DNA of 8,969 nucleotides from Salpingoeca rosetta (GCA_033442325.1 JAWQFM010000009.1:1-8969), one strand, 5' to 3'; positions 1 through 8,969 are shown, counted from the stretch's first letter. Notes: generated from the letters alone by a model not told the origin. Numbers and translations are program-made.

Positions 1-605
1 TTTCCTGTTTTGGGGTGAATTACCGGCAAACGGTGCTGGCCTCGATGACACAAGTGTGAGCCGTTCATAGCTGCTTGCGTGAGGCCACCTTGCCTGCGCT
101 CAAACTCGTACATGCCTTGGATGAATGCTGCTGTGAAGCCACGTGCGCGAAAGTGGCGGCGGCCCGATCCACTGCCCCTCATGGGAGCGCCTGTTGCCCG
201 AATGGGGGCGTAGTGAATCGCCGTATGGAGATACTCTCCTCTGCAGTCGTACACGAGTTCGGCCACGCGCACAACGTGCTTCATCTCCTGGAAGAGGCAC
301 CGTCGCCACTGGAGCACTTGCTCGTCGTCTGCCTCGCGAAGTGGGTGAAACCGGCGGCGGCCTCGGGGATTCGACAGAGCGCCCCTTGCCTGGGTATCGC
401 GGTGGCTTTGAAGCGTCAGTGGTGCGTCGCCGTCAACAGTGAAGAGCCCAAACTGTTCGCTGATCTCCCTCTCGTCTTTCACCTTGCATTCATATGGAAG
501 AAACGTGCGGAACCATTGCCATTTTGGACCCGCGGAGCTCACGTACACGTCGGTGGCGTCCACGTCTGGATCGTGTCGCCGGGAGCTCTTGCGCTTATCC
601 GCCAT
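1..605 (-). CDS. Gene A, second copy (5' part; runs off the window start)
   Basis: 1-605 matches 5622-6226. ATG at 605-603; SHLCH codons at about 45-59. Confidence 0.85.
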   Translation of the reverse strand, partial: MADKRKSSRRHDPDVDATDVYVSSAGPKWQWFRTFLPYECKVKDEREISEQFGLFTVDGDAPLTLQSHRDTQARGALSNPRGRRRFHPLREADDEQVLQWRRCLFQEMKHVVRVAELVYDCRGEYLHTAIHYAPIRATGAPMRGSGSGRRHFRARGFTAAFIQGMYEFERRQGGLTQAAMNGSHLCHRGQHRLPVIHPKTG

Positions 606-698
606 CGTTGTCACTCCGCTTGAATGACAGAAGCATGGATGCCTACTGCTTCCTCATCCATCACACACATCCACACAACACGCAGCCAGCCCCTTGCC

Positions 699-761
699 AG
701 ATCTAGTGATTTTCCTAAATCTAGTGTTTTTTCTACATCTAGTGTTTTTGCTCAATCTAGC
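699..761 (+). repeat. Degenerate 18-bp repeat (ATCTAGTG core) x 3.5 between the divergent genes A and B
   Basis: TCTAG at 702, 720, 738 and 756, exactly 18 nt apart. Confidence 0.85.
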
Positions 762-1259
762 TGGTGGCTGGTAACACGCAAATACGTGAAGTCGCGGGAC
801 GATTGTCATTTCCATGGCAAACCCAGCAACACAGCGCCGTCGCCCTGAGGAACTCGCCGCAGTTACATCGCACTCGTGCCTGCCTCATCGTACATGGCGC
901 CCCCCAGACAACGGAGGGCAATTGATGCAACGTGGTTGCCGGGTGCTTGCAATGACAAGCTGCACAGTCCCCTGTTGCAAGGAAAATCGTTTGTTACGAA
1001 GGTACACGGACACAGAAGGCACACACTGGCACGGCATCATGCGTGCTTCCGTGGCGGTGTTTACGGATGGATCATTTTCTCGCTGATCCTGAAACAACAA
1101 TCATGCGCGGACCCAGGCTTGCCAGACCAAGAACCCTCGGTGTGCGCCGCCGGAGGCAAGCTCCAAGCCACATTTGCTCAGGTGGACGCCATGTGGGCTA
1201 CGGGCCGTGTTCCGCCGAGGTCCTTTCGCCCTCCTGCTCGTGTTCGTCGACCGCTCGCC

Positions 1260-2870
1260 ATGGACGCCATGCAGACAGAAGCTCTCCCGATTCAGCAGCC
1301 ACATCAACACCCGTCGCATCAGCAACAGCAGCAGCGTGAGCAACAAGACGTAAGTGATTGACTCTCATTGTCCATGGCACATTGCTCTCTGCTGCTAGAT
1401 CTGTCTTTGTTGCTAGATCTGTCTTTGTTGCTAGATCTGTCTTTGTTGCTAGATCTGTCTTTGCTGCTAGATCTGTCTTTGCTGCTAGATCTGCCTTTGC
1501 TGCTAGATCTGTCTTTGGTGCTAGATCTGTCTTTGTTGCTAGATCTGTCTTTGTTGCTAGATCTGTCTTTGTTGCTAGATCTGTCTTTGTTGCTAGATCT
1601 GTCTTTGCTGCTAGATCTGCCTTTGCTGCTAGATCTGTCTTTGCTGCTAGATCTGTCTTTGTTGTTAGATCTGTCTTTGCTGCTAGATCTGTCTTCACGC
1701 AGAGTTGACCTGCATTCCTGCATTGCATCTCGTTTTATTTCACGCGCTACCGGTCCAAAACGAAAACACACACCTTCAACCAGGATGACGACAAGTCCCG
1801 TGTTCCTCAAGCAATGGCATCCACGCTGCAGCCCAGCCAAGACGTGCGGACCGCACGCACGGAGGCAGATGAATCGGGGAAGTCTACCACGCGCCATTCC
1901 CAACAGCAGCTAGAGGCGAGTTACTTCCATACCATCACGCAGAAACACACTCACATACAACACACAACTAACGCTTTGCTTGCCTGAACATGGCTGGTAA
2001 CATTGCCGTTTTGCACCCATGATGATCTCATCTCTACCACGGTACGACAACTCATCATAGCTCATTCATTCCTATGCACATATTCACACGCACACAGCCT
2101 CTGTTCAAGCAAGAGGACACCACTGAGCGGCAGAATGTTCTACAGGACGTGCGTCACGGGCACACACAATTCCGTTTCACATACACGCACACGCATGCGT
2201 GCAATCATGCACGCATATACATGCAGCGTTCATTCTTTTTGCCCATGAAACCCCACAGTCTTGTCTCCTCCTCTCACATTTGTGTCAACGTGATGCTTTA
2301 CAACGTGCCTTCCACTGCGTTAACGCCATAGGCCACACCCGAAGCAACGCAGCCTGAACAGCAGCAACCTGACCAGCAAGACGTAAGTGATTGACTCTCA
2401 TTGTCCATGGCACATTGCTCTCTGCTGCTAGATCTGCCTTTGTTGCTAGATCTGTCTTTGTTGCTAGATCTGTCTTTGCTGCTAGATCTGTCTTTGTTGC
2501 TAGATCTGTCTTTGTTGCTAGATCTGTCTTTGTTGCTAGATCTGTCTTTGTATTAGCGCTGCATACCGTACTGCTCAACACACACACACGCATACTCACA
2601 CACAAGGTAATTGTGCCCGAGACACCGCCGGAACTGCAGCCACAGACGGTTGACCAGCTGGATATGCAGCAGGAAGATGTGCTGCTCAACCACGATGATG
2701 TACGTGACGCCCTAGAATACAAACACTGTGTGCGTGAGCCATGCTCATAGGTTGTTGTTTGCTTCGGTGCTAGTCAGCCATACCACATGACGCTCCGCCC
2801 ATGTACGACTGCTCATCTCAGCTTGCATGGAATGGCTGATGCCCAGATCACGGATCTTTGCAAGTCATAC
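1260..2870 (+). CDS. Gene B copy 1 (spliced): exons 1260-1349, 1784-1915, 2098-2148, 2332-2382, 2607-2699, last exon from 2751 or 2847 into the N gap; Q/D/E-rich protein
   Basis: ATG in gccATGg context at 1260. Donors GTAAGT (1350), GCGAGT (1916), GTGCGT (2149), GTAAGT (2383), GTACGT (2700). Acceptors CCAG (1783), ACAG (2097), ATAG (2331), CAAG (2606), ATAG (2750) or CCAG (2846). All junctions are phase 0 and join without stops: MDAMQTEALPIQQPHQHPSHQQQQQREQQD|DDDKSRVPQ...SQQQLE|PLFKQEDTTERQNVLQD|ATPEATQPEQQQPDQQD|VIVPETPPEL...LLNHDD|... The true start could lie further upstream because the frame is open from 876. Confidence 0.65.
1394..1695 (+). repeat. 18-bp minisatellite (GCTAGATCTGTCTTTGYT) x ~17, inside gene B intron 1
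   Basis: Units start every 18 nt from 1394 to 1682, with GTT/GCT/GGT and GTC/GCC variants. Confidence 0.97.
2427..2550 (+). repeat. 18-bp minisatellite (GCTAGATCTGTCTTTGYT) x ~7, inside gene B intron 4
   Basis: Same unit as 1394-1695; starts from 2427 to 2535. Confidence 0.97.
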
Positions 2871-3761
2871 NNNNNNNNNNNNNNNNNNNNNNNNNNNNNN
2901 NNNNNNNNNNNNNNNNNNNNNNNNNNNNNNNNNNNNNNNNNNNNNNNNNNNNNNNNNNNNNNNNNNNNNNNNNNNNNNNNNNNNNNNNNNNNNNNNNNNN
3001 NNNNNNNNNNNNNNNNNNNNNNNNNNNNNNNNNNNNNNNNNNNNNNNNNNNNNNNNNNNNNNNNNNNNNNNNNNNNNNNNNNNNNNNNNNNNNNNNNNNN
3101 NNNNNNNNNNNNNNNNNNNNNNNNNNNNNNNNNNNNNNNNNNNNNNNNNNNNNNNNNNNNNNNNNNNNNNNNNNNNNNNNNNNNNNNNNNNNNNNNNNNN
3201 NNNNNNNNNNNNNNNNNNNNNNNNNNNNNNNNNNNNNNNNNNNNNNNNNNNNNNNNNNNNNNNNNNNNNNNNNNNNNNNNNNNNNNNNNNNNNNNNNNNN
3301 NNNNNNNNNNNNNNNNNNNNNNNNNNNNNNNNNNNNNNNNNNNNNNNNNNNNNNNNNNNNNNNNNNNNNNNNNNNNNNNNNNNNNNNNNNNNNNNNNNNN
3401 NNNNNNNNNNNNNNNNNNNNNNNNNNNNNNNNNNNNNNNNNNNNNNNNNNNNNNNNNNNNNNNNNNNNNNNNNNNNNNNNNNNNNNNNNNNNNNNNNNNN
3501 NNNNNNNNNNNNNNNNNNNNNNNNNNNNNNNNNNNNNNNNNNNNNNNNNNNNNNNNNNNNNNNNNNNNNNNNNNNNNNNNNNNNNNNNNNNNNNNNNNNN
3601 NNNNNNNNNNNNNNNNNNNNNNNNNNNNNNNNNNNNNNNNNNNNNNNNNNNNNNNNNNNNNNNNNNNNNNNNNNNNNNNNNNNNNNNNNNNNNNNNNNNN
3701 NNNNNNNNNNNNNNNNNNNNNNNNNNNNNNNNNNNNNNNNNNNNNNNNNNNNNNNNNNNNN
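2871..3761. other. Assembly gap (891 N), probably equivalent to 7720-8620 (901 bp) of copy 2
   Basis: The flanks match 7719 and 8621. Other gaps are at 4541-4640, 6761-6860 and 7302-7401 (100 N each). Confidence 0.85.
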
Positions 3762-4451
3762 AGCGCGTCGTCACAGTAAGCAGCTGTTACAGTGTGGTGT
3801 GTGCGTGGGTGCGTGTGTGAGCGTCTGCGTGTCTGCCATCTGAGTGTCAGTGTGCGTGTCTGTGTGTGCGTGTTAGTGAGTGTGTCTGCTCGTTGGTCTT
3901 CATGCGTGTTTGCTCTCCTCTGTACGATGTGTTGTCTGCAGAGAGAGCGATACTGTGGTTGGAACATCCGTTGGAACCTCCTCGGCCATGACTGCCACCA
4001 CCCTGAGGTGCGATTGTGTGTGTGTGTGTGTGTGTCTGTGTGTGTGTGTCTGTGTGTGTGTGTGTGTGTGTCTGTGTGTGTGTGTCTGTGTGTCTGTGTC
4101 TGTGTGTCTATGTCTGTGTCTGTGTCTGTGTGTCTGTGTGTGTGTCTGTGTGTGTGTCTGTGTGTCTGTGTCTGTGTGTCTGTGTCTGTGTGAGTGTCCG
4201 TGTTTGTGTCTGTGTGCTTGTGTGTGTCTGTGTGTGTATGTGTGTGTCTGTGTGTGTGTGTCTGTCTGTGTTCGTGTGCTTGTGTCTGTGTGTGTGTGTG
4301 TCTGTGTGTCTGTGTGTGTCTGTGTGTGTGCGTGCTCGTTGCTTCATGTGTGTATGCTCTCCTCTGTATGACGTGTTGTCTGCAGGGCGAGCGCTACCGT
4401 GGTTGGAACATCCGTTGGAACCTCCTCGGTCATGACTGCCAACACGCTGAG
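3762..4451 (+). CDS. Gene C copy 1, internal exons (..3775), 3942-4007 and 4386-4451; remainder lost in gap 4541-4640
   Basis: Two 66-nt exons, each bounded by TGTTGTCTGCAG| and |GTGCGA, encode [21 protein letters not shown] and [21 protein letters not shown]. 3762-3775 matches 8621-8634. Confidence 0.55.
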
Positions 4452-4540
4452 GTGCGATTGTCTGTGTGCGTGTGTGTGTGTGTCTGTGTGTGTGTGTGCC
4501 TGTGTGTGTGTGTGTGTGTGTCTGTGTGTCTGTGTCTGTG
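4016..4540 (+). repeat. (GT)n/(GTCT) compound microsatellites in gene C introns
   Basis: Directly visible at 4016-4330 and 4460-4540. Confidence 0.95.
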
Positions 4541-4640
4541 NNNNNNNNNNNNNNNNNNNNNNNNNNNNNNNNNNNNNNNNNNNNNNNNNNNNNNNNNNNN
4601 NNNNNNNNNNNNNNNNNNNNNNNNNNNNNNNNNNNNNNNN

Positions 4641-5350
4641 CTATATTCAGCTTAAATCTATATTCAGCAGAGAATCTAGATCCAGTATAAAATCTAGATC
4701 CAGTATAAAATCTAGATCCAGTACAAAATCTAGATCCAGCAGAGAATCTAGATCCAGTATAAAATCTATATTCAGCTTAAAATCTATATTCAGCAGAGAA
4801 TCTAGATCCAGTATAAAATCTATATTCAGCTTAAAATCTATATTCAGCAGAGAATCTAGATCCAGTATAAAATCTATATTCAGCTTGAAATCTATATTCA
4901 GCAGAGAATCTAGATCCAGTATAAAATCTATATTCAGCTTAAAATCTAGATCCAGCAGAGAATCTAGATCCAGTATAAAATCTATATTCAGCTTAAAATC
5001 AAGATCCAGCAGAGAATCTAGATCCAGTATAAAATCTATATTCAGCTTAAAATCTATATTCAGCAGAGAATCTAGATCCAGTATAAAATCTAGATCCAGT
5101 ATAAAATCTATATTCAGCAGAGAATCTAGATCCAGTATAAAATCTATATTCAGCTTAAAATCTAGATCCAGCAGAGAATCTAGATCCAGTATAAAATCTA
5201 TATTCAGCTTAAAATCTAGATCCAGTGTAAAATCTAGATCCAGTATACAATCTATATTCAGCTTAAAATCTAGATCCAGCAGAGAATCTAGATATAGATT
5301 TTACTAGATATAGATTTTCATCTAAATACAGTAGACAATCTAGATCTAGC
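4641..5350 (+). repeat. AT-rich 18-bp minisatellite, ~36 units with a 54-bp higher-order trimer and a degenerate tail at 5287-5350
   Basis: Variants TCTAGATCCAGTATAAAA (C), TCTATATTCAGCTTAAAA (A), TCTATATTCAGCAGAGAA (B) and TCTAGATCCAGCAGAGAA (D), mostly ordered C-A-B or C-A-D. The 18-nt period is strict from 4657 to 5286. Confidence 0.97.
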
Positions 5351-5437
5351 AAAGCTTGACAGGTGCAGGTGTTGGTGCGTCAATGCAATGCGCTTCGCTT
5401 TAATTGGTTCGCTGACAAGGCGGCGTTGACAACACAC

Positions 5438-6226
5438 TCACACGCGTTTCCCAAACATGCGATAGATGGACTCTGGTCCATGCACACGGCGCGCAGGAAG
5501 AAGGCAGGGCGGCTCGTGGATGCAGCCGCCGAGAATGCCAGGGCAGCCTTGGCGGCTGTTGTTGCGATGAACAGCTTCAAGGCAGCAGTGCGAGGGTCTG
5601 ATGCACTCCAGAAGCAGCTTCTTTCCTGTTTTGGGGTGAATTACCGGCAAACGGTGCTGGCCTCGATGACACAAGTGTGAGCCGTTCATAGCTGCTTGCG
5701 TGAGGCCACCTTGCCTGCGCTCAAACTCGTACATGCCTTGGATGAATGCTGCTGTGAAGCCACGTGCGCGAAAGTGGCGGCGGCCCGATCCACTGCCCCT
5801 CATGGGAGCGCCTGTTGCCCGAATGGGGGCGTAGTGAATCGCCGTATGGAGATACTCTCCTCTGCAGTCGTACACGAGTTCGGCCACGCGCACAACGTGC
5901 TTCATCTCCTGGAAGAGGCACCGTCGCCACTGGAGCACTTGCTCGTCGTCTGCCTCGCGAAGTGGGTGAAACCGGCGGCGGCCTCGGGGATTCGACAGAG
6001 CGCCCCTTGCCTGGGTATCGCGGTGGCTTTGAAGCGTCAGTGGTGCGTCGCCGTCAACAGTGAAGAGCCCAAACTGTTCGCTGATCTCCCTCTCGTCTTT
6101 CACCTTGCATTCATATGGAAGAAACGTGCGGAACCATTGCCATTTTGGACCCGCGGAGCTCACGTACACGTCGGTGGCGTCCACGTCTGGATCGTGTCGC
6201 CGGGAGCTCTTGCGCTTATCCGCCAT
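5438..6226 (-). CDS. Gene A: His-Cys box (zinc-binding His-Me finger) endonuclease, I-PpoI-like, 262 aa, intronless
   Basis: The ORF track lists 5438..6235 from a GTG; the first ATG is at 6226 (acaacgATGg). The C-terminus SHLCH-x20-CIRPSHCCLEAVHRNNSRQGCPGILGGCIHEPPCLLPARRVHGP aligns by eye with I-PpoI [51 protein letters not shown] (recalled from memory). The general-base His, the metal-binding Asn (E-x4-N-x2-R-x2-C) and the C-terminal Zn-ligand Cys/His positions are present. Confidence 0.88.
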   Translation of the reverse strand: MADKRKSSRRHDPDVDATDVYVSSAGPKWQWFRTFLPYECKVKDEREISEQFGLFTVDGDAPLTLQSHRDTQARGALSNPRGRRRFHPLREADDEQVLQWRRCLFQEMKHVVRVAELVYDCRGEYLHTAIHYAPIRATGAPMRGSGSGRRHFRARGFTAAFIQGMYEFERRQGGLTQAAMNGSHLCHRGQHRLPVIHPKTGKKLLLECIRPSHCCLEAVHRNNSRQGCPGILGGCIHEPPCLLPARRVHGPESIYRMFGKRV

Positions 6227-6319
6227 CGTTGTCACTCCGCTTGAATGACAGAAGCATGGATGCCTACTGCTTCCTCATCCATCACACACATCCACACAAC
6301 ACGCAGCCAGCCCCTTGCC

Positions 6320-6382
6320 AGATCTAGTGATTTTCCTAAATCTAGTGTTTTTTCTACATCTAGTGTTTTTGCTCAATCTAGC
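6320..6382 (+). repeat. Copy 2 of the degenerate 18-bp ATCTAGTG repeat
   Basis: Matches 699-761 at offset 5621. Confidence 0.85.
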
Positions 6383-6979
6383 TGGTGGCTGGTAACACGC
6401 AAATACGTGAAGTCGCGGGACGATTGTCATTTCCATGGCAAACCCAGCAACACAGCGCCGTCGCCCTGAGGAACTCGCCGCAGTTACATCGCACTCGTGC
6501 CTGCCTCATCGTACATGGCGCCCCCCAGACAACGGAGGGCAATTGATGCAACGTGGTTGCCGGGTGCTTGCAATGACAAGCTGCACAGTCCCCTGTTGCA
6601 AGGAAAATCGTTTGTTACGAAGGTACACGGACACAGAAGGCACACACTGGCACGGCATCATGCGTGCTTCCGTGGCGGTGTTTACGGATGGATCATTTTC
6701 TCGCTGATCCTGAAACAACAATCATGCGCGGACCCAGGCTTGCCAGACCAAGAACCCTCGNNNNNNNNNNNNNNNNNNNNNNNNNNNNNNNNNNNNNNNN
6801 NNNNNNNNNNNNNNNNNNNNNNNNNNNNNNNNNNNNNNNNNNNNNNNNNNNNNNNNNNNNTGTGCGCCGCCGGAGGCAAGCTCCAAGCCACATTTGCTCA
6901 GGTGGACGCCATGTGGGCTACGGGCCGTGTTCCGCCGAGGTCCTTTCGCCCTCCTGCTCGTGTTCGTCGACCGCTCGCC

Positions 6980-8094
6980 ATGGACGCCATGCAGACAGAA
7001 GCTCTCCCGATTCAGCAGCCACATCAACACCCGTCGCATCAGCAACAGCAGCAGCGTGAGCAACAAGACGTAAGTGATTGACTCTCATTGTCCATGGCAC
7101 ATTGCTCTCTGCTGCTAGATCTGTCTTTGTTGCTAGATCTGTCTTTGTTGCTAGATCTGTCTTTGTTGCTAGATCTGTCTTTGCTGCTAGATCTGTCTTT
7201 GCTGCTAGATCTGCCTTTGCTGCTAGATCTGTCTTGGTGCTAGATCTGTCTTTGTGCTAGATCTGTCTTGTGCTAGATCTGTCTTGTGCTAGATCTGTCT
7301 TNNNNNNNNNNNNNNNNNNNNNNNNNNNNNNNNNNNNNNNNNNNNNNNNNNNNNNNNNNNNNNNNNNNNNNNNNNNNNNNNNNNNNNNNNNNNNNNNNNN
7401 NTATTAGCGCTGCATACCGTACTGCTCAACACACACACGCATACTCACACACAAGGTAATTGTGCCCGAGACACCGCCGGAACTGCAGCCACAGACGGTT
7501 GACCAGCTGGATATGCAGCAGGAAGATGTGCTGCTCAACCACGATGATGTACGTGACGCCCTAGAATACAAACACTGTGTGCGTGAGCCATGCTCATAGG
7601 TTGTTGTTTGCTTCGGTGCTAGTCAGCCATACCACATGACGCTCCGCCCATGTACGACTGCTCATCTCAGCTTGCATGGAATGGCTGATGCCCAGATCAC
7701 GGATCTTTGCAAGTCATACATTGGTCCGCCCCTGCACCGACTCTCCCCCATCCTCGGCGAGGACGACGACGATGACGACGACAAAGATGTGAATGACGAA
7801 GACGACGATGTAAACGAGCAAGAGGAGGACAACGGCGGGGACGAAGGCAGCAGCATGGGCGCAGCAGTGGCTCCGAATACACCTAGCAACGCTGATACAC
7901 AGCAGAGGCGCGCCCCTCCACTGTACATGCTCGCAACATCATCAGTCACTGGACATTGGCTTGTGTTTGGTTCGTCGTGTCAGCCTTGCTCGCTGTGCGG
8001 AACTCGAACGAGGTTCTGCTGTGCATGCGCAACACACTTGCCTGTTTGTCTTCTGCACATTGTGGACCATGCCGACAGAGCCCGCTCCAAGTAA
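6980..8094 (+). CDS. Gene B copy 2: exons 6980-7069, [gap], 7456-7548, terminal exon 7600 (or 7696)-8094; acidic tract plus C-terminal Cys/His zinc-binding domain resembling the piggyBac transposase CRD
   Basis: Exons match copy 1. The terminal exon encodes a D/E tract (7759-7845) and HWLVFGSSCQPCSLCGTRTRFCCACATHLPVCLLHIVDH (7954-8070), ending at TAA 8092-8094. Confidence 0.65.
7114..7301 (+). repeat. 18-bp minisatellite, copy 2 of the intron 1 array, truncated by a gap
   Basis: Same unit. The last units are 1-2 nt short, probably read-end errors. Confidence 0.95.
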
Positions 8095-8319
8095 ACGAGT
8101 CGAAACCGCACATAGCATCAAGCAGAAACAGCCATTGTGTCGACAAAAGAATCGTATATTTGCGCACACTGCTAAGCGTTTACGCTCACCTATAGGCGCT
8201 GCTACATCCTCCCACAGCGTTGGGACCCGTGCTGGCGCTGGCCTGCCTCCCACATCAAGCATAGGCGCAGTCTGCTGCTTTGGCCGCAGCAAGCCCCATA
8301 GCCATTTCAAGCCCGGCCA

Positions 8320-8339
8320 AAAAACTGAATTCAGTTTTT
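8320..8339. other. Perfect 20-bp palindrome AAAAACTGAATTCAGTTTTT
   Basis: The sequence is its own reverse complement and lies between the gene B stop and the gene C start. Confidence 0.9.
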
Positions 8340-8351
8340 CACAACCACGCA

Positions 8352-8378
8352 CAACAACAACAACAACAACAACAACAA
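8352..8378 (+). repeat. (CAA)9 microsatellite, probably in the 5' UTR or upstream of gene C
   Basis: Nine perfect CAA units about 70 nt upstream of ATG 8447. Confidence 0.9.
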
Positions 8379-8446
8379 CAGACGCGCAGCAAGCAACAAC
8401 AGACGCACACACGCACCAGCAGCAGCACGGTCATCCCACTGCAACC

Positions 8447-8645
8447 ATGGAGCCAACGCGCCCTGTGACACGAGCTCAACGACGACGGTACGTGTGTGTG
8501 TGTGTGTGTCTGTGTCTGTGCATGTGCATGTGCATGTGTGTTTGGTTCTGCTCACGACGTTCTTTGTCTTGCGTTTTGGTCGTTGCTGACAGTGAGACTG
8601 ACGGAAGTCCATCCTCCTCCAGCGCGTCGTCACAGTATGCAGCTG

Positions 8646-8685
<40 letters not shown>

Positions 8686-8868
8686 TGTGTGTCTGTGTGT
8701 CTGTGTGTCTGTGTGCGTGTCTGTGTGTGCGTGTTTGTGTGTGTGTCTGCTCGTTGGTCTTCATGCGTGTTTGCTCTCCTCTGTACGATGTGTTGTCTGC
8801 AGGGAGAGCGATACTGTGGTTGGAACATCCGTTGGAACCTCCTCGGCCATGACTGCCAACACCCTGAG
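8447..8868 (+). CDS. Gene C copy 2, 5' exons 8447-8487, 8593-8634, 8803-8868 (continues beyond the window); Ser/Thr-rich protein of unknown function
   Basis: gcaaccATGg at 8447. Donors GTACGT (8488), GTATGC (8635), GTGCGA (8869); acceptors GACAG (8592), TGCAG (8802). All junctions are phase 2, giving [49 protein letters not shown](R). Confidence 0.6.
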
Positions 8869-8969
8869 GTGCGATTGTGTGTGTGTGTGTGTGTGTCTGT
8901 GTGTGTGTGTCTGTGTGTGTGTGTGTGTGTCTGTGTGTGTGTGTCTGTGTGTCTGTGTCTGTGTCTGTG
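8492..8969 (+). repeat. (GT)n/(GTCT) compound microsatellites in gene C introns (copy 2)
   Basis: Directly visible at about 8492-8520, 8650-8748 and 8877-8969. Confidence 0.95.

What the first reader, a model, noticed from the sequence alone, without database searches (positions are those of the whole stretch)
1..8969. Tandemly amplified three-gene cassette: candidate undescribed nuclease-carrying selfish element
Seen: the order [18-bp satellite] <-A (nuclease) | B (zinc-finger)-> palindrome C-> repeats head-to-tail with near-identical sequence. Two of the three genes carry domains associated with selfish DNA, but no transposase core, reverse transcriptase, TIR or TSD is visible. Inference: a mobile or self-amplifying element (or an integrated concatemer of a plasmid- or virus-like circle) that I cannot assign to a known family. 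A mobilising enzyme could be hidden in gap 4541-4640 as the rest of gene C.
Basis: partly seen in the sequence, partly recalled or inferred. Interest (0 to 1): 0.82.

Follow-up and report, generated by a model that had tools for sequence, protein, structure and literature searches.

The report
Chromosome-end nuclease gene pair, assembled twice
The "tandem cassette" is two separately assembled scaffolds of the choanoflagellate Salpingoeca rosetta joined by a placeholder gap; the real content is a chromosome-end gene pair, an intact free-standing relative of the I-PpoI homing endonuclease beside a small zinc-finger protein, and amplification or mobility is not shown.

Summary
The near-identical repeat exists, but the head-to-tail layout does not rest on reads. 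Window 1-4540 is the whole small scaffold GL833078.1. Window 4641-8969 is the exact reverse complement of the last 4329 bp of the 2.48-Mb scaffold GL832956.1. Both come from S. rosetta assembly GCA_000188695.1. The 100 N between them is a join, not a measured gap. The two pieces overlap in content, so the data fit one locus assembled twice as well as two copies.

Gene A (PTSG_01082, 262 aa) is an intact His-Cys box nuclease. A family profile matches I-PpoI at E 1.2e-8, and all catalytic and zinc-binding columns are invariant. The family is tiny: 10 hits among 1.84 billion representative proteins. Its metagenomic relatives lie antisense inside LSU rDNA. A 34-38%-identical paralogue lies about 10 kb from telomere repeats on another scaffold, next to an ORF with the same zinc-finger spacing as gene B.

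Gene C is unannotated and doubtful. I found no transposase, reverse transcriptase, integrase, capsid, terminal inverted repeats, rRNA or intron. The published telomere table lists this scaffold end as telomeric.

Best reading: a subtelomeric gene pair carrying a free-standing endonuclease of the homing type. Interest is moderate.

The parts
1..4540 (.). Piece 1: the whole of scaffold GL833078.1 (S. rosetta GCA_000188695.1), two contigs around an 891-N gap
   Evidence: the reverse complement of L001 equals window 1-4540, and the record is 4540 bp long.
4541..4640 (.). 100-N join between two different source scaffolds; not a gap measured within a scaffold
4641..8969 (.). Piece 2: reverse complement of GL832956.1 2475419-2479747, the 3' end of supercontig 2. 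In the source record at least 7257 N follow the equivalent of window 8969.
   Evidence: 0 mismatches over 4329 bp. Table S3 of the genome paper lists this end as telomeric.
5438..6226 (-). Gene A, full copy (PTSG_01082, P0017, 262 aa, single exon): free-standing His-Cys box (I-PpoI family) endonuclease homologue. The region shared with relatives is about 5450-6037 and the His-Cys box is 5504-5680. The gene has no stops or frameshifts.
1..605 (-). Gene A, second copy (P0001; annotated 24-605, 194 aa). The end of the scaffold cuts off its 3' part; there is no internal break. It is identical to the full copy over the shared bases.
814..2839 (+). Gene B, copy 1, as annotated (PTSG_11477, P0018, 209 aa, multi-exon). 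It is rich in Q and acidic residues. The 891-N gap cuts the model short. The 18-bp satellites lie in two of its introns.
6911..8094 (+). Gene B, copy 2, as annotated (PTSG_01081, P0019, 164 aa), crossing the N run 7302-7401. The last ORF (7636-8094) holds an acidic tract and a Cys/His motif at 7987-8070 with spacing C-x2-C-x7-C-x-C-x6-C-x2-H-x3-H. The annotated product splices that motif out.
6322..6381 (.). Divergent A|B intergenic region with four CTAG-centred 18-bp repeats; the same repeats are at 701-760 in copy 1
1393..1695 (+). 18-bp satellite in an intron of B, 16.8 copies. Further arrays are at 2426-2551 and 7113-7301.
4654..5349 (.). Satellite of 54-bp units (3 x 18), 11.9 copies, downstream of A at the outer end of supercontig 2. 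A short stretch in inverted orientation lies at 5288-5349.
8320..8339 (.). Perfect 20-nt palindrome centred on GAATTC, 226 nt after the stop of B. It is seen once only, because its counterpart in copy 1 would fall in the 891-N gap.
   Evidence: read directly. My estimate of the chance expectation is about 0.007 per window.
8447..8969 (+). It is not annotated and is doubtful as a gene.

Best explanation
The window shows a subtelomeric segment of a Salpingoeca rosetta chromosome, the 3' end of supercontig 2, that is represented twice in the assembly. The two representations were placed side by side by a scaffolding join.

The segment carries a divergently oriented pair of lineage-specific genes set among satellites of 18-bp period and TG microsatellites.
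- A (PTSG_01082) is a single-exon, free-standing member of the His-Cys box (I-PpoI type, beta-beta-alpha-metal) endonuclease family. Its general-base His, metal-binding Asn and both zinc sites are conserved. Its nearest non-choanoflagellate relatives are genes embedded antisense in LSU rDNA insertions.
- B (PTSG_01081 / PTSG_11477) is a Q- and acid-rich protein whose last ORF holds a seven-ligand Cys/His motif.
- The same pairing of nuclease paralogue, Cys/His-motif ORF with acidic tail and short-period satellite recurs about 10 kb from telomere repeats on supercontig 5.

Shown: the domain identity of A, the composite nature of the window, the position at a scaffold end, and the second locus.

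Inferred: A is an active sequence-specific DNA endonuclease that descends from rDNA-intron homing endonucleases. Any extra copy arose by the ectopic recombination that is usual at chromosome ends, possibly helped by breaks that A itself makes. B is its DNA-binding or regulatory partner. The CTAG-centred 18-bp repeats are candidate binding sites.
For: Composite window.

Telomeric end. Table S3 of PMC4054682 lists the 3' end of supercontig 2 (2,480 kb) with 3 fosmid mates to TTAGGG reads and 'matches others: Yes'.

Paralogue locus: (TAACCC)n at L002 240-352, PTSG_02071 at 9986-10828, the Cys/His ORF at 11302-11628(-), and a 16-bp satellite at 11839-12541.

Nuclease identity:
- I-PpoI in the PDB at E 3e-4 with the single sequence and 1.2e-8 with the family profile.
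- 14 invariant columns, including S-H-x-C-H, the C/H/E/N/R columns and the C-C-H-C zinc ligands.
- The best fold matches of a weak model are I-PpoI.

rDNA-embedded relatives.

Nothing else is present: no transposase, reverse transcriptase, integrase or capsid, no terminal inverted repeats, no rRNA, tRNA or intron.

Shared CTAG core at 18-bp register in three satellite families; CTAG is 6 observed against about 24 expected outside the arrays.
Against: - No telomere repeat lies in the window itself. The subtelomeric position rests on a published table and on the scaffold-end position.
- A's cluster has only two members on two contigs. The cassette is therefore not one of the regions shared by most chromosome ends.
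- Activity of A, any target site and any link between A and duplication are untested.
- The annotated product of B in copy 2 omits the Cys/His motif. That motif is only 28 residues long, with 12 of 28 identical to the paralogue's neighbour.
- Pfam PF05551 scores A below its cut-off (16.2 against 27 bits).
- Both structure models are of low confidence (pLDDT 43 and 50).
- No expression data for the sense strand could be read.
Confidence: 0.55

Rival explanations
1. Redundant assembly. There is only one physical copy. GL833078.1 is a leftover scaffold of the same locus that the hybrid 454/Sanger assembly failed to merge because of the satellites. It overlaps the terminal island of supercontig 2 and extends about 1.2 kb into that scaffold's large gap. 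The 'repeat' is then an artefact.
For: - There are 0 substitutions over 1906 aligned bases of the first three segments. The only differences there are 8 run-length columns in T or AC runs, a usual sequencing-error type.
- The two pieces are collinear and overlapping: piece 2 covers unit positions about -981 to 3348 and piece 1 covers 1 to 4540.
- The assembly was a Newbler plus Arachne hybrid with manual edits.
- A's protein cluster has just these two members.
Against: 18 substitutions and 3 gap columns lie within 260 bp at 3762-4020 against 8621-8880. They include changes in clean, non-microsatellite sequence and a differently structured TG tract. That is hard to explain as error in an assembled consensus. 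Assemblers normally merge kilobase overlaps that are 100% identical unless depth or mate pairs conflict.
Confidence: 0.3
2. A true head-to-tail tandem array of a 5.6-kb nuclease-carrying unit, amplified by the element itself: a self-amplifying or mobile element of no known family.
For: - The join puts the pieces in the orientation and order expected for a tandem array.
- The pieces show near-identity with a few real differences.
- The gap sizes agree: 891 N against 901 bp.
- A homing-type nuclease is present.
- The satellites and a source gap of at least 7.3 kb are the kind of sequence that defeats assemblers.
Against: - No read-level continuity exists between the copies.
- Only two copies appear in the whole annotated assembly and protein collection.
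- There is no recombinase, transposase, replication protein, terminal inverted repeat or target-site duplication.
- The published survey of S. rosetta transposable elements holds none of the six words I searched it for: endonuclease, tandem, satellite, piggyBac, unclassified, GL8330.
Confidence: 0.12
3. An extrachromosomal circle or an integrated concatemer of a plasmid- or virus-like molecule.
For: More than one unit length of sequence is typical of assembled circles, and the iteron-like 18-bp repeats recall plasmid origins.
Against: - The 'more than one unit' length is produced by the join.
- Piece 2 is scaffolded to a 2.48-Mb chromosome-scale supercontig.
- No replication, partition, capsid, packaging or integrase domain was found.
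- B has spliceosomal-type introns like host genes.
Confidence: 0.03

Closest known systems
I-PpoI and other His-Cys box homing endonucleases of nuclear rDNA group I introns (Physarum, Naegleria, Didymium)
   Same: The S-H-L-C-H stretch and the following C...H...E...N...R...G-C...C-x-H...C stretch align with I-PpoI residues 91-100 and 103-143. All ligand and catalytic columns are invariant in the family. The fold search puts I-PpoI first.
   Different: - A is not in rDNA or in an intron.
- It has an unconserved N-terminal extension of about 60 residues and an insertion of about 20 residues between the two motif halves, which its five closest relatives share.
- It is 262 aa against 163.
- It scores below the PF05551 cut-off.
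- Its target and activity are unknown.
Antisense His-Cys box homing endonuclease genes in LSU rDNA group I introns (for example position L2066; PMC9548176)
   Same: A's metagenomic relatives lie antisense inside eukaryotic LSU rDNA, within an insertion of about 0.9 kb. These are P0004 in L003 and the match in L009-L012.
   Different: Rfam finds no group I ribozyme in those insertions. The S. rosetta genes are outside rDNA.
Subtelomeric duplicated gene blocks such as yeast Y' elements (established knowledge, not tested here)
   Same: A kilobase-scale, gene-bearing unit at a chromosome end, near-identical between copies, flanked by short-period repeats and hard to assemble.
   Different: Y' encodes a helicase and is present at many ends and in short tandem runs. 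Here only two copies are on record, their arrangement is unknown, and the gene is a nuclease.
piggyBac C-terminal cysteine-rich domain
   Same: A compact Cys/His motif at a protein's C-terminus. One PDB chain named 'DDE_Tnp_1_7 domain-containing protein' (6zop_A) appears in the hit list.
   Different: That match is not significant (E 0.47). No DDE_Tnp_1_7 or other transposase domain is found in B or in any ORF tested.

Membership tests
His-Cys box (I-PpoI type) endonucleases | Conserved His-Cys box: general-base His, metal-binding Asn and two Cys/His zinc sites | tested here: met
   PDB I-PpoI at E 3e-4 with the single sequence and 1.2e-8 with the profile. S183 H184 C186 H187 C208 H213 E217 N222 R225 G227 C228 C235 H237 C241 are invariant in 13 sequences.
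His-Cys box (I-PpoI type) endonucleases | Beta-beta-alpha-metal fold with the I-PpoI-like DNA-binding sheet | tested here: inconclusive
   The AlphaFold2 models have pLDDT 43.4 and 49.6. The top two Foldseek hits are I-PpoI, but at E 0.024-0.065 and TM 0.31/0.45.
His-Cys box (I-PpoI type) endonucleases | Passes the curated Pfam PF05551 threshold | tested here: not met
   16.2 bits against a cut-off of 27. The relatives P0003 and P0006 score 18.5 and 22.8.
Intron-encoded nuclear homing endonuclease | Gene lies inside a group I intron of rDNA | tested here: not met
   The window holds no rRNA or group I intron at E up to 1. A sits between a satellite and a protein-coding gene.
Intron-encoded nuclear homing endonuclease | Cleaves an allele that lacks the element and is copied into it | not testable with these tools
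   No allele without the element and no activity data are available.
Tandem array / amplified unit | Two or more units joined head to tail in continuous sequence | tested here: not met
   The only junction between the copies is a 100-N join of two separate scaffolds.
Cut-and-paste DNA transposon (piggyBac, Kolobok and similar) | Transposase catalytic domain | tested here: not met
   Pfam finds none in A, B, the annotated products or 14 other ORFs.
Cut-and-paste DNA transposon (piggyBac, Kolobok and similar) | Terminal inverted repeats | tested here: not met
   The inverted repeats found are only satellite against satellite or microsatellite against microsatellite.
Polinton-like or virus-like element | Protein-primed polymerase, integrase, packaging ATPase, capsid | tested here: not met
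   No such Pfam family appears in any ORF tested. What lies in the N runs cannot be seen.
Subtelomeric duplicon | Lies next to a telomere | tested here: inconclusive
   Piece 2 is the last 4.3 kb of supercontig 2, and its 3' end is listed as telomeric with 3 fosmid mates. The window itself holds no telomere repeat. The paralogue locus does have (TAACCC)n.
Subtelomeric duplicon | Copies at several chromosome ends | not testable with these tools
   The genome cannot be searched by DNA here. By protein, only two contigs carry A.

The most novel reading that the evidence does not exclude
A and B form a two-gene selfish module of chromosome ends in a close relative of animals. In this reading a free-standing His-Cys box endonuclease that escaped from rDNA introns works with a zinc-finger and acidic partner. 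The partner would bind the CTAG-centred 18-bp repeats or restrain the nuclease. The module would copy itself between subtelomeres through repair of the breaks it makes. That would be a nuclear, non-intronic homing system in a holozoan.
Probability: 0.12. Interest if true: 0.7.

Novelty: new member of a known kind. Interest (0 to 1): 0.38.

Why it matters
His-Cys box endonucleases are known almost only from group I introns of protist and fungal rDNA. Here an intact one stands alone at a chromosome end of the model choanoflagellate. It has a diverged paralogue at another end and a recurring neighbour, and the family has only a handful of relatives among 1.84 billion representative proteins.

If it is active, it would be a natural sequence-specific nuclease in a holozoan nucleus and a possible driver of subtelomere dynamics.

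For the scan, the main lesson is practical. The striking "tandem amplification" is a product of scaffold joining. It should not be counted as evidence of a new mobile element until reads are examined.

Tried and rejected
- The word-index protein search with A found only A itself. With B's Cys/His region it found nothing. With B's first ORF it found only the two annotated S. rosetta products.
- Pfam, NCBIfam and PDB searches of B, of the paralogue's neighbour and of 14 other ORFs gave nothing significant. DUF7896 (E 0.016) and 6zop_A (E 0.47) are below any threshold and I rejected them.
- Rfam and tRNA scans of the window were empty.
- Structure prediction of A with 6 and then 13 sequences gave poor models, so the fold search is only a hint.
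With 6 sequences it returned one rDNA locus four times.
- One multi-source Rfam call failed internally.
- There is no DNA similarity between the window and the paralogue locus.
- Gene identifiers and run accessions were not found in the main text of any paper. Sense-strand expression values are not in the stored part of the genome paper's supplement.
- The S. rosetta transposable-element survey holds none of the six words I searched it for.
After that I used only the stop-free piece.
I searched spliced models exon by exon by reference, and I used the annotated products only as a tool returned them. The joined step is left out.


Full report
**1. What the window is**

The sequence is eukaryotic. 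GC is 0.52, it has gt...ag introns, and it has TG microsatellites.

A look-up of the truncated copy of gene A placed window 1-4540 on NCBI record GL833078.1 of assembly GCA_000188695.1. That record is 4540 bp long, and its reverse complement as fetched equals window 1-4540 exactly. A paper names this assembly as the Salpingoeca rosetta genome.

The full-length product of gene A is an annotated protein on a different record, GL832956.1, which is 2,479,747 bp long. Window 4641-8969 is, without one mismatch, the reverse complement of the last 4329 bp of that record. In the record these bases are cut off from the scaffold body by at least 7257 N.

The window is therefore a composite: a whole small scaffold, then 100 N, then the inverted tip of a large scaffold. 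I could not identify which later assembly or program made the join. A Micro-C re-scaffolding of this same assembly has been published.

**2. The observation**

The repeat is real as sequence.
- 1139 bp are identical.
- Two further segments, of 447 bp and 320 bp, have no substitutions and 8 run-length columns.
- One 260-bp segment has 18 substitutions and 3 gap columns, mostly in a TG tract but including changes in clean sequence.

The gaps behave as follows.
- 6761-6860 replaces one base of the other copy.
- 7302-7401 replaces 963 bp of the other copy, including three annotated exons of B.
- 2871-3761 (891 N) matches 901 bp of the other copy.
- 4541-4640 is the join between scaffolds.

Nothing connects copy 1 to copy 2 at the level of reads. 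The two pieces are also collinear and overlapping, so a single locus assembled twice fits nearly as well. In that case the small scaffold would extend into the large gap. The clustered substitutions argue for two physical copies, but they lie in one microsatellite-rich stretch next to a contig start.

My weighting is about 0.6 for two or more copies and about 0.3-0.4 for redundancy. I cannot say whether two copies would be tandem.

**3. Gene A**

A occupies 5438-6226(-). It is a single exon of 262 aa. Its length and position match PTSG_01082, the last gene of supercontig 2.

Evidence that A is a His-Cys box nuclease:
- Its C-terminal part matches I-PpoI in the PDB at E 3e-4. A profile of A and its five nearest relatives matches at E 1.2e-8, in two blocks that cover I-PpoI 91-100 and 103-143.
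- In a 13-sequence alignment the columns S183, H184, C186, H187, C208, H213, E217, N222, R225, G227, C228, C235, H237 and C241 are invariant. These correspond to the general-base His, the metal-binding Asn and the zinc ligands of the family.
- Pfam PF05551 is hit only below its cut-off.
- The two AlphaFold2 models are poor. Their best structural matches are nevertheless I-PpoI, at E 0.02 and TM 0.45 on the target. I treat that as a hint only.

A has no stop or frameshift. The second copy is merely cut off by the scaffold end.

**4. The family**

A full HMMER scan of 1.84 billion representative proteins gave 10 hits.
- The nearest is a 347-aa protein on a transcript-sized contig of unknown organism (P0002).
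- The second is the S. rosetta paralogue PTSG_02071, which is 34-38% identical.
- P0004, and a match found four times in one metagenomic organism, lie antisense inside eukaryotic LSU rDNA. They sit within an insertion of about 0.9 kb bounded by rRNA segments that the two organisms share.
- P0006 has an LSU fragment just downstream.
- Rfam sees no group I ribozyme in these insertions. Antisense His-Cys genes in LSU group I introns are on record in the literature (PMC9548176).
- A more distant I-PpoI-like gene, P0009, is free-standing among P450 and glycosidase genes. Free-standing members outside rDNA are therefore not unique to S. rosetta.

**5. Gene B and the second locus**

The annotated products are PTSG_11477 (814-2839, 209 aa, cut short by the gap) and PTSG_01081 (6911-8094, 164 aa). 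They are rich in Q and acidic residues and have no relatives or domains.

The last ORF (7636-8094) contains a Cys/His motif at 7987-8070. The annotated product of copy 2 splices it out.

The same ligand spacing, with 12 of 28 residues identical and followed by an acidic tail, occurs in an ORF (L002 11302-11628, minus strand). That ORF lies within the gene next to the paralogue PTSG_02071. The paralogue locus is at the start of supercontig 5. It has (TAACCC)n at 240-352, a 384-bp repeat, and a 16-bp satellite beside the pair.

So nuclease, Cys/His-motif protein and short-period satellite co-occur twice, in different relative orientation and with no DNA similarity. This is the best evidence that A and B belong together, but it rests on a short motif.

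I searched each by reference and used the database's own products. The joined step is left out.

**6. Gene C, satellites and palindrome**

'C' (8447 onward, and 3762-4540) is not annotated. Its 66-nt 'exon' belongs to a repeat of about 440 bp whose flanks are as conserved as the 'exon'. I regard it as doubtful.

Three satellite families all keep a CTAG core at an 18-bp register: the intronic 18-bp arrays, the 54-bp (3 x 18) array, and the four 18-bp repeats between A and B. CTAG is depleted elsewhere, at 6 observed against about 24 expected. They may share an origin or a binding protein. That is inference.

The 20-nt palindrome at 8320-8339 is perfect but is seen only once.

**7. What it is not**

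- No transposase, reverse transcriptase, integrase, polymerase or capsid domain was found.
- There are no terminal inverted repeats.
- There is no rRNA, tRNA or ribozyme.
- The S. rosetta transposable-element survey holds none of the six words I searched it for.

**8. Where it sits**

The genome paper's telomere table lists the 3' end of supercontig 2 (2,480 kb) as telomeric. Three 40-kb fosmid mates link it to TTAGGG reads, and the table records similarity to other ends. The 5' end of supercontig 5 is listed as well.

**9. Verdict**

The finding is a subtelomeric gene pair containing an intact, free-standing, rare His-Cys box endonuclease homologue. It is represented twice in the assembly and was made to look tandem by a scaffold join.

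The selfish-element reading survives only as a hypothesis about the nuclease. Amplification, circularity and mobility are not shown.

Interest is moderate (0.38). Novelty: a new member of a known kind.

Noticed in passing
L003 1332-2217; L012 1719-2638 (also L009-L011): Relatives of A lie antisense inside eukaryotic LSU rDNA, within an insertion of about 0.9 kb at a site shared by two organisms. Rfam detects no group I intron there, so the nature of the insertion is open.
   Followed up: partly
L012 about 1519-1560; starts of L009 and L011: A run of an 8-bp tandem repeat lies inside the span that aligns as LSU rRNA, close to the nuclease-bearing insertion.
   Followed up: no
L008 85-1485 and 1985-2057: A 466-aa relative of A with a long N-terminal extension, including an acidic tract, is followed about 500 bp downstream by a fragment of LSU rRNA on the opposite strand.
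   Followed up: no
L014 6001-6531: An I-PpoI-like gene that passes PF05551 stands alone among P450 and glycoside hydrolase genes on a 182-kb contig. It is a free-standing His-Cys box gene outside rDNA.
   Followed up: no
window 701-760, 1393-1695, 2426-2551, 4654-5293, 6322-6381, 7113-7301: Three different satellite families share an 18-bp period and a CTAG core. CTAG is about fourfold depleted in the rest of the window.
   Followed up: partly
window 1324-1392 against 2357-2425: An exon end, its splice donor and the start of the 18-bp satellite are duplicated within gene B at about 95% identity. An assembler could collapse the 963 bp between the two arrays, which may explain the N run at 7302-7401.
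   Followed up: partly
L002 1-20828 and L013 1-7257: Both S. rosetta loci of this nuclease family are islands at scaffold ends. Each is separated from the scaffold body by N runs of at least 7.3-7.7 kb.
   Followed up: partly
window 7930-8094 (P0019): The annotated product of PTSG_01081 treats the Cys/His motif as an intron, although the motif is conserved next to the paralogue. The splice form needs transcript evidence.
   Followed up: no
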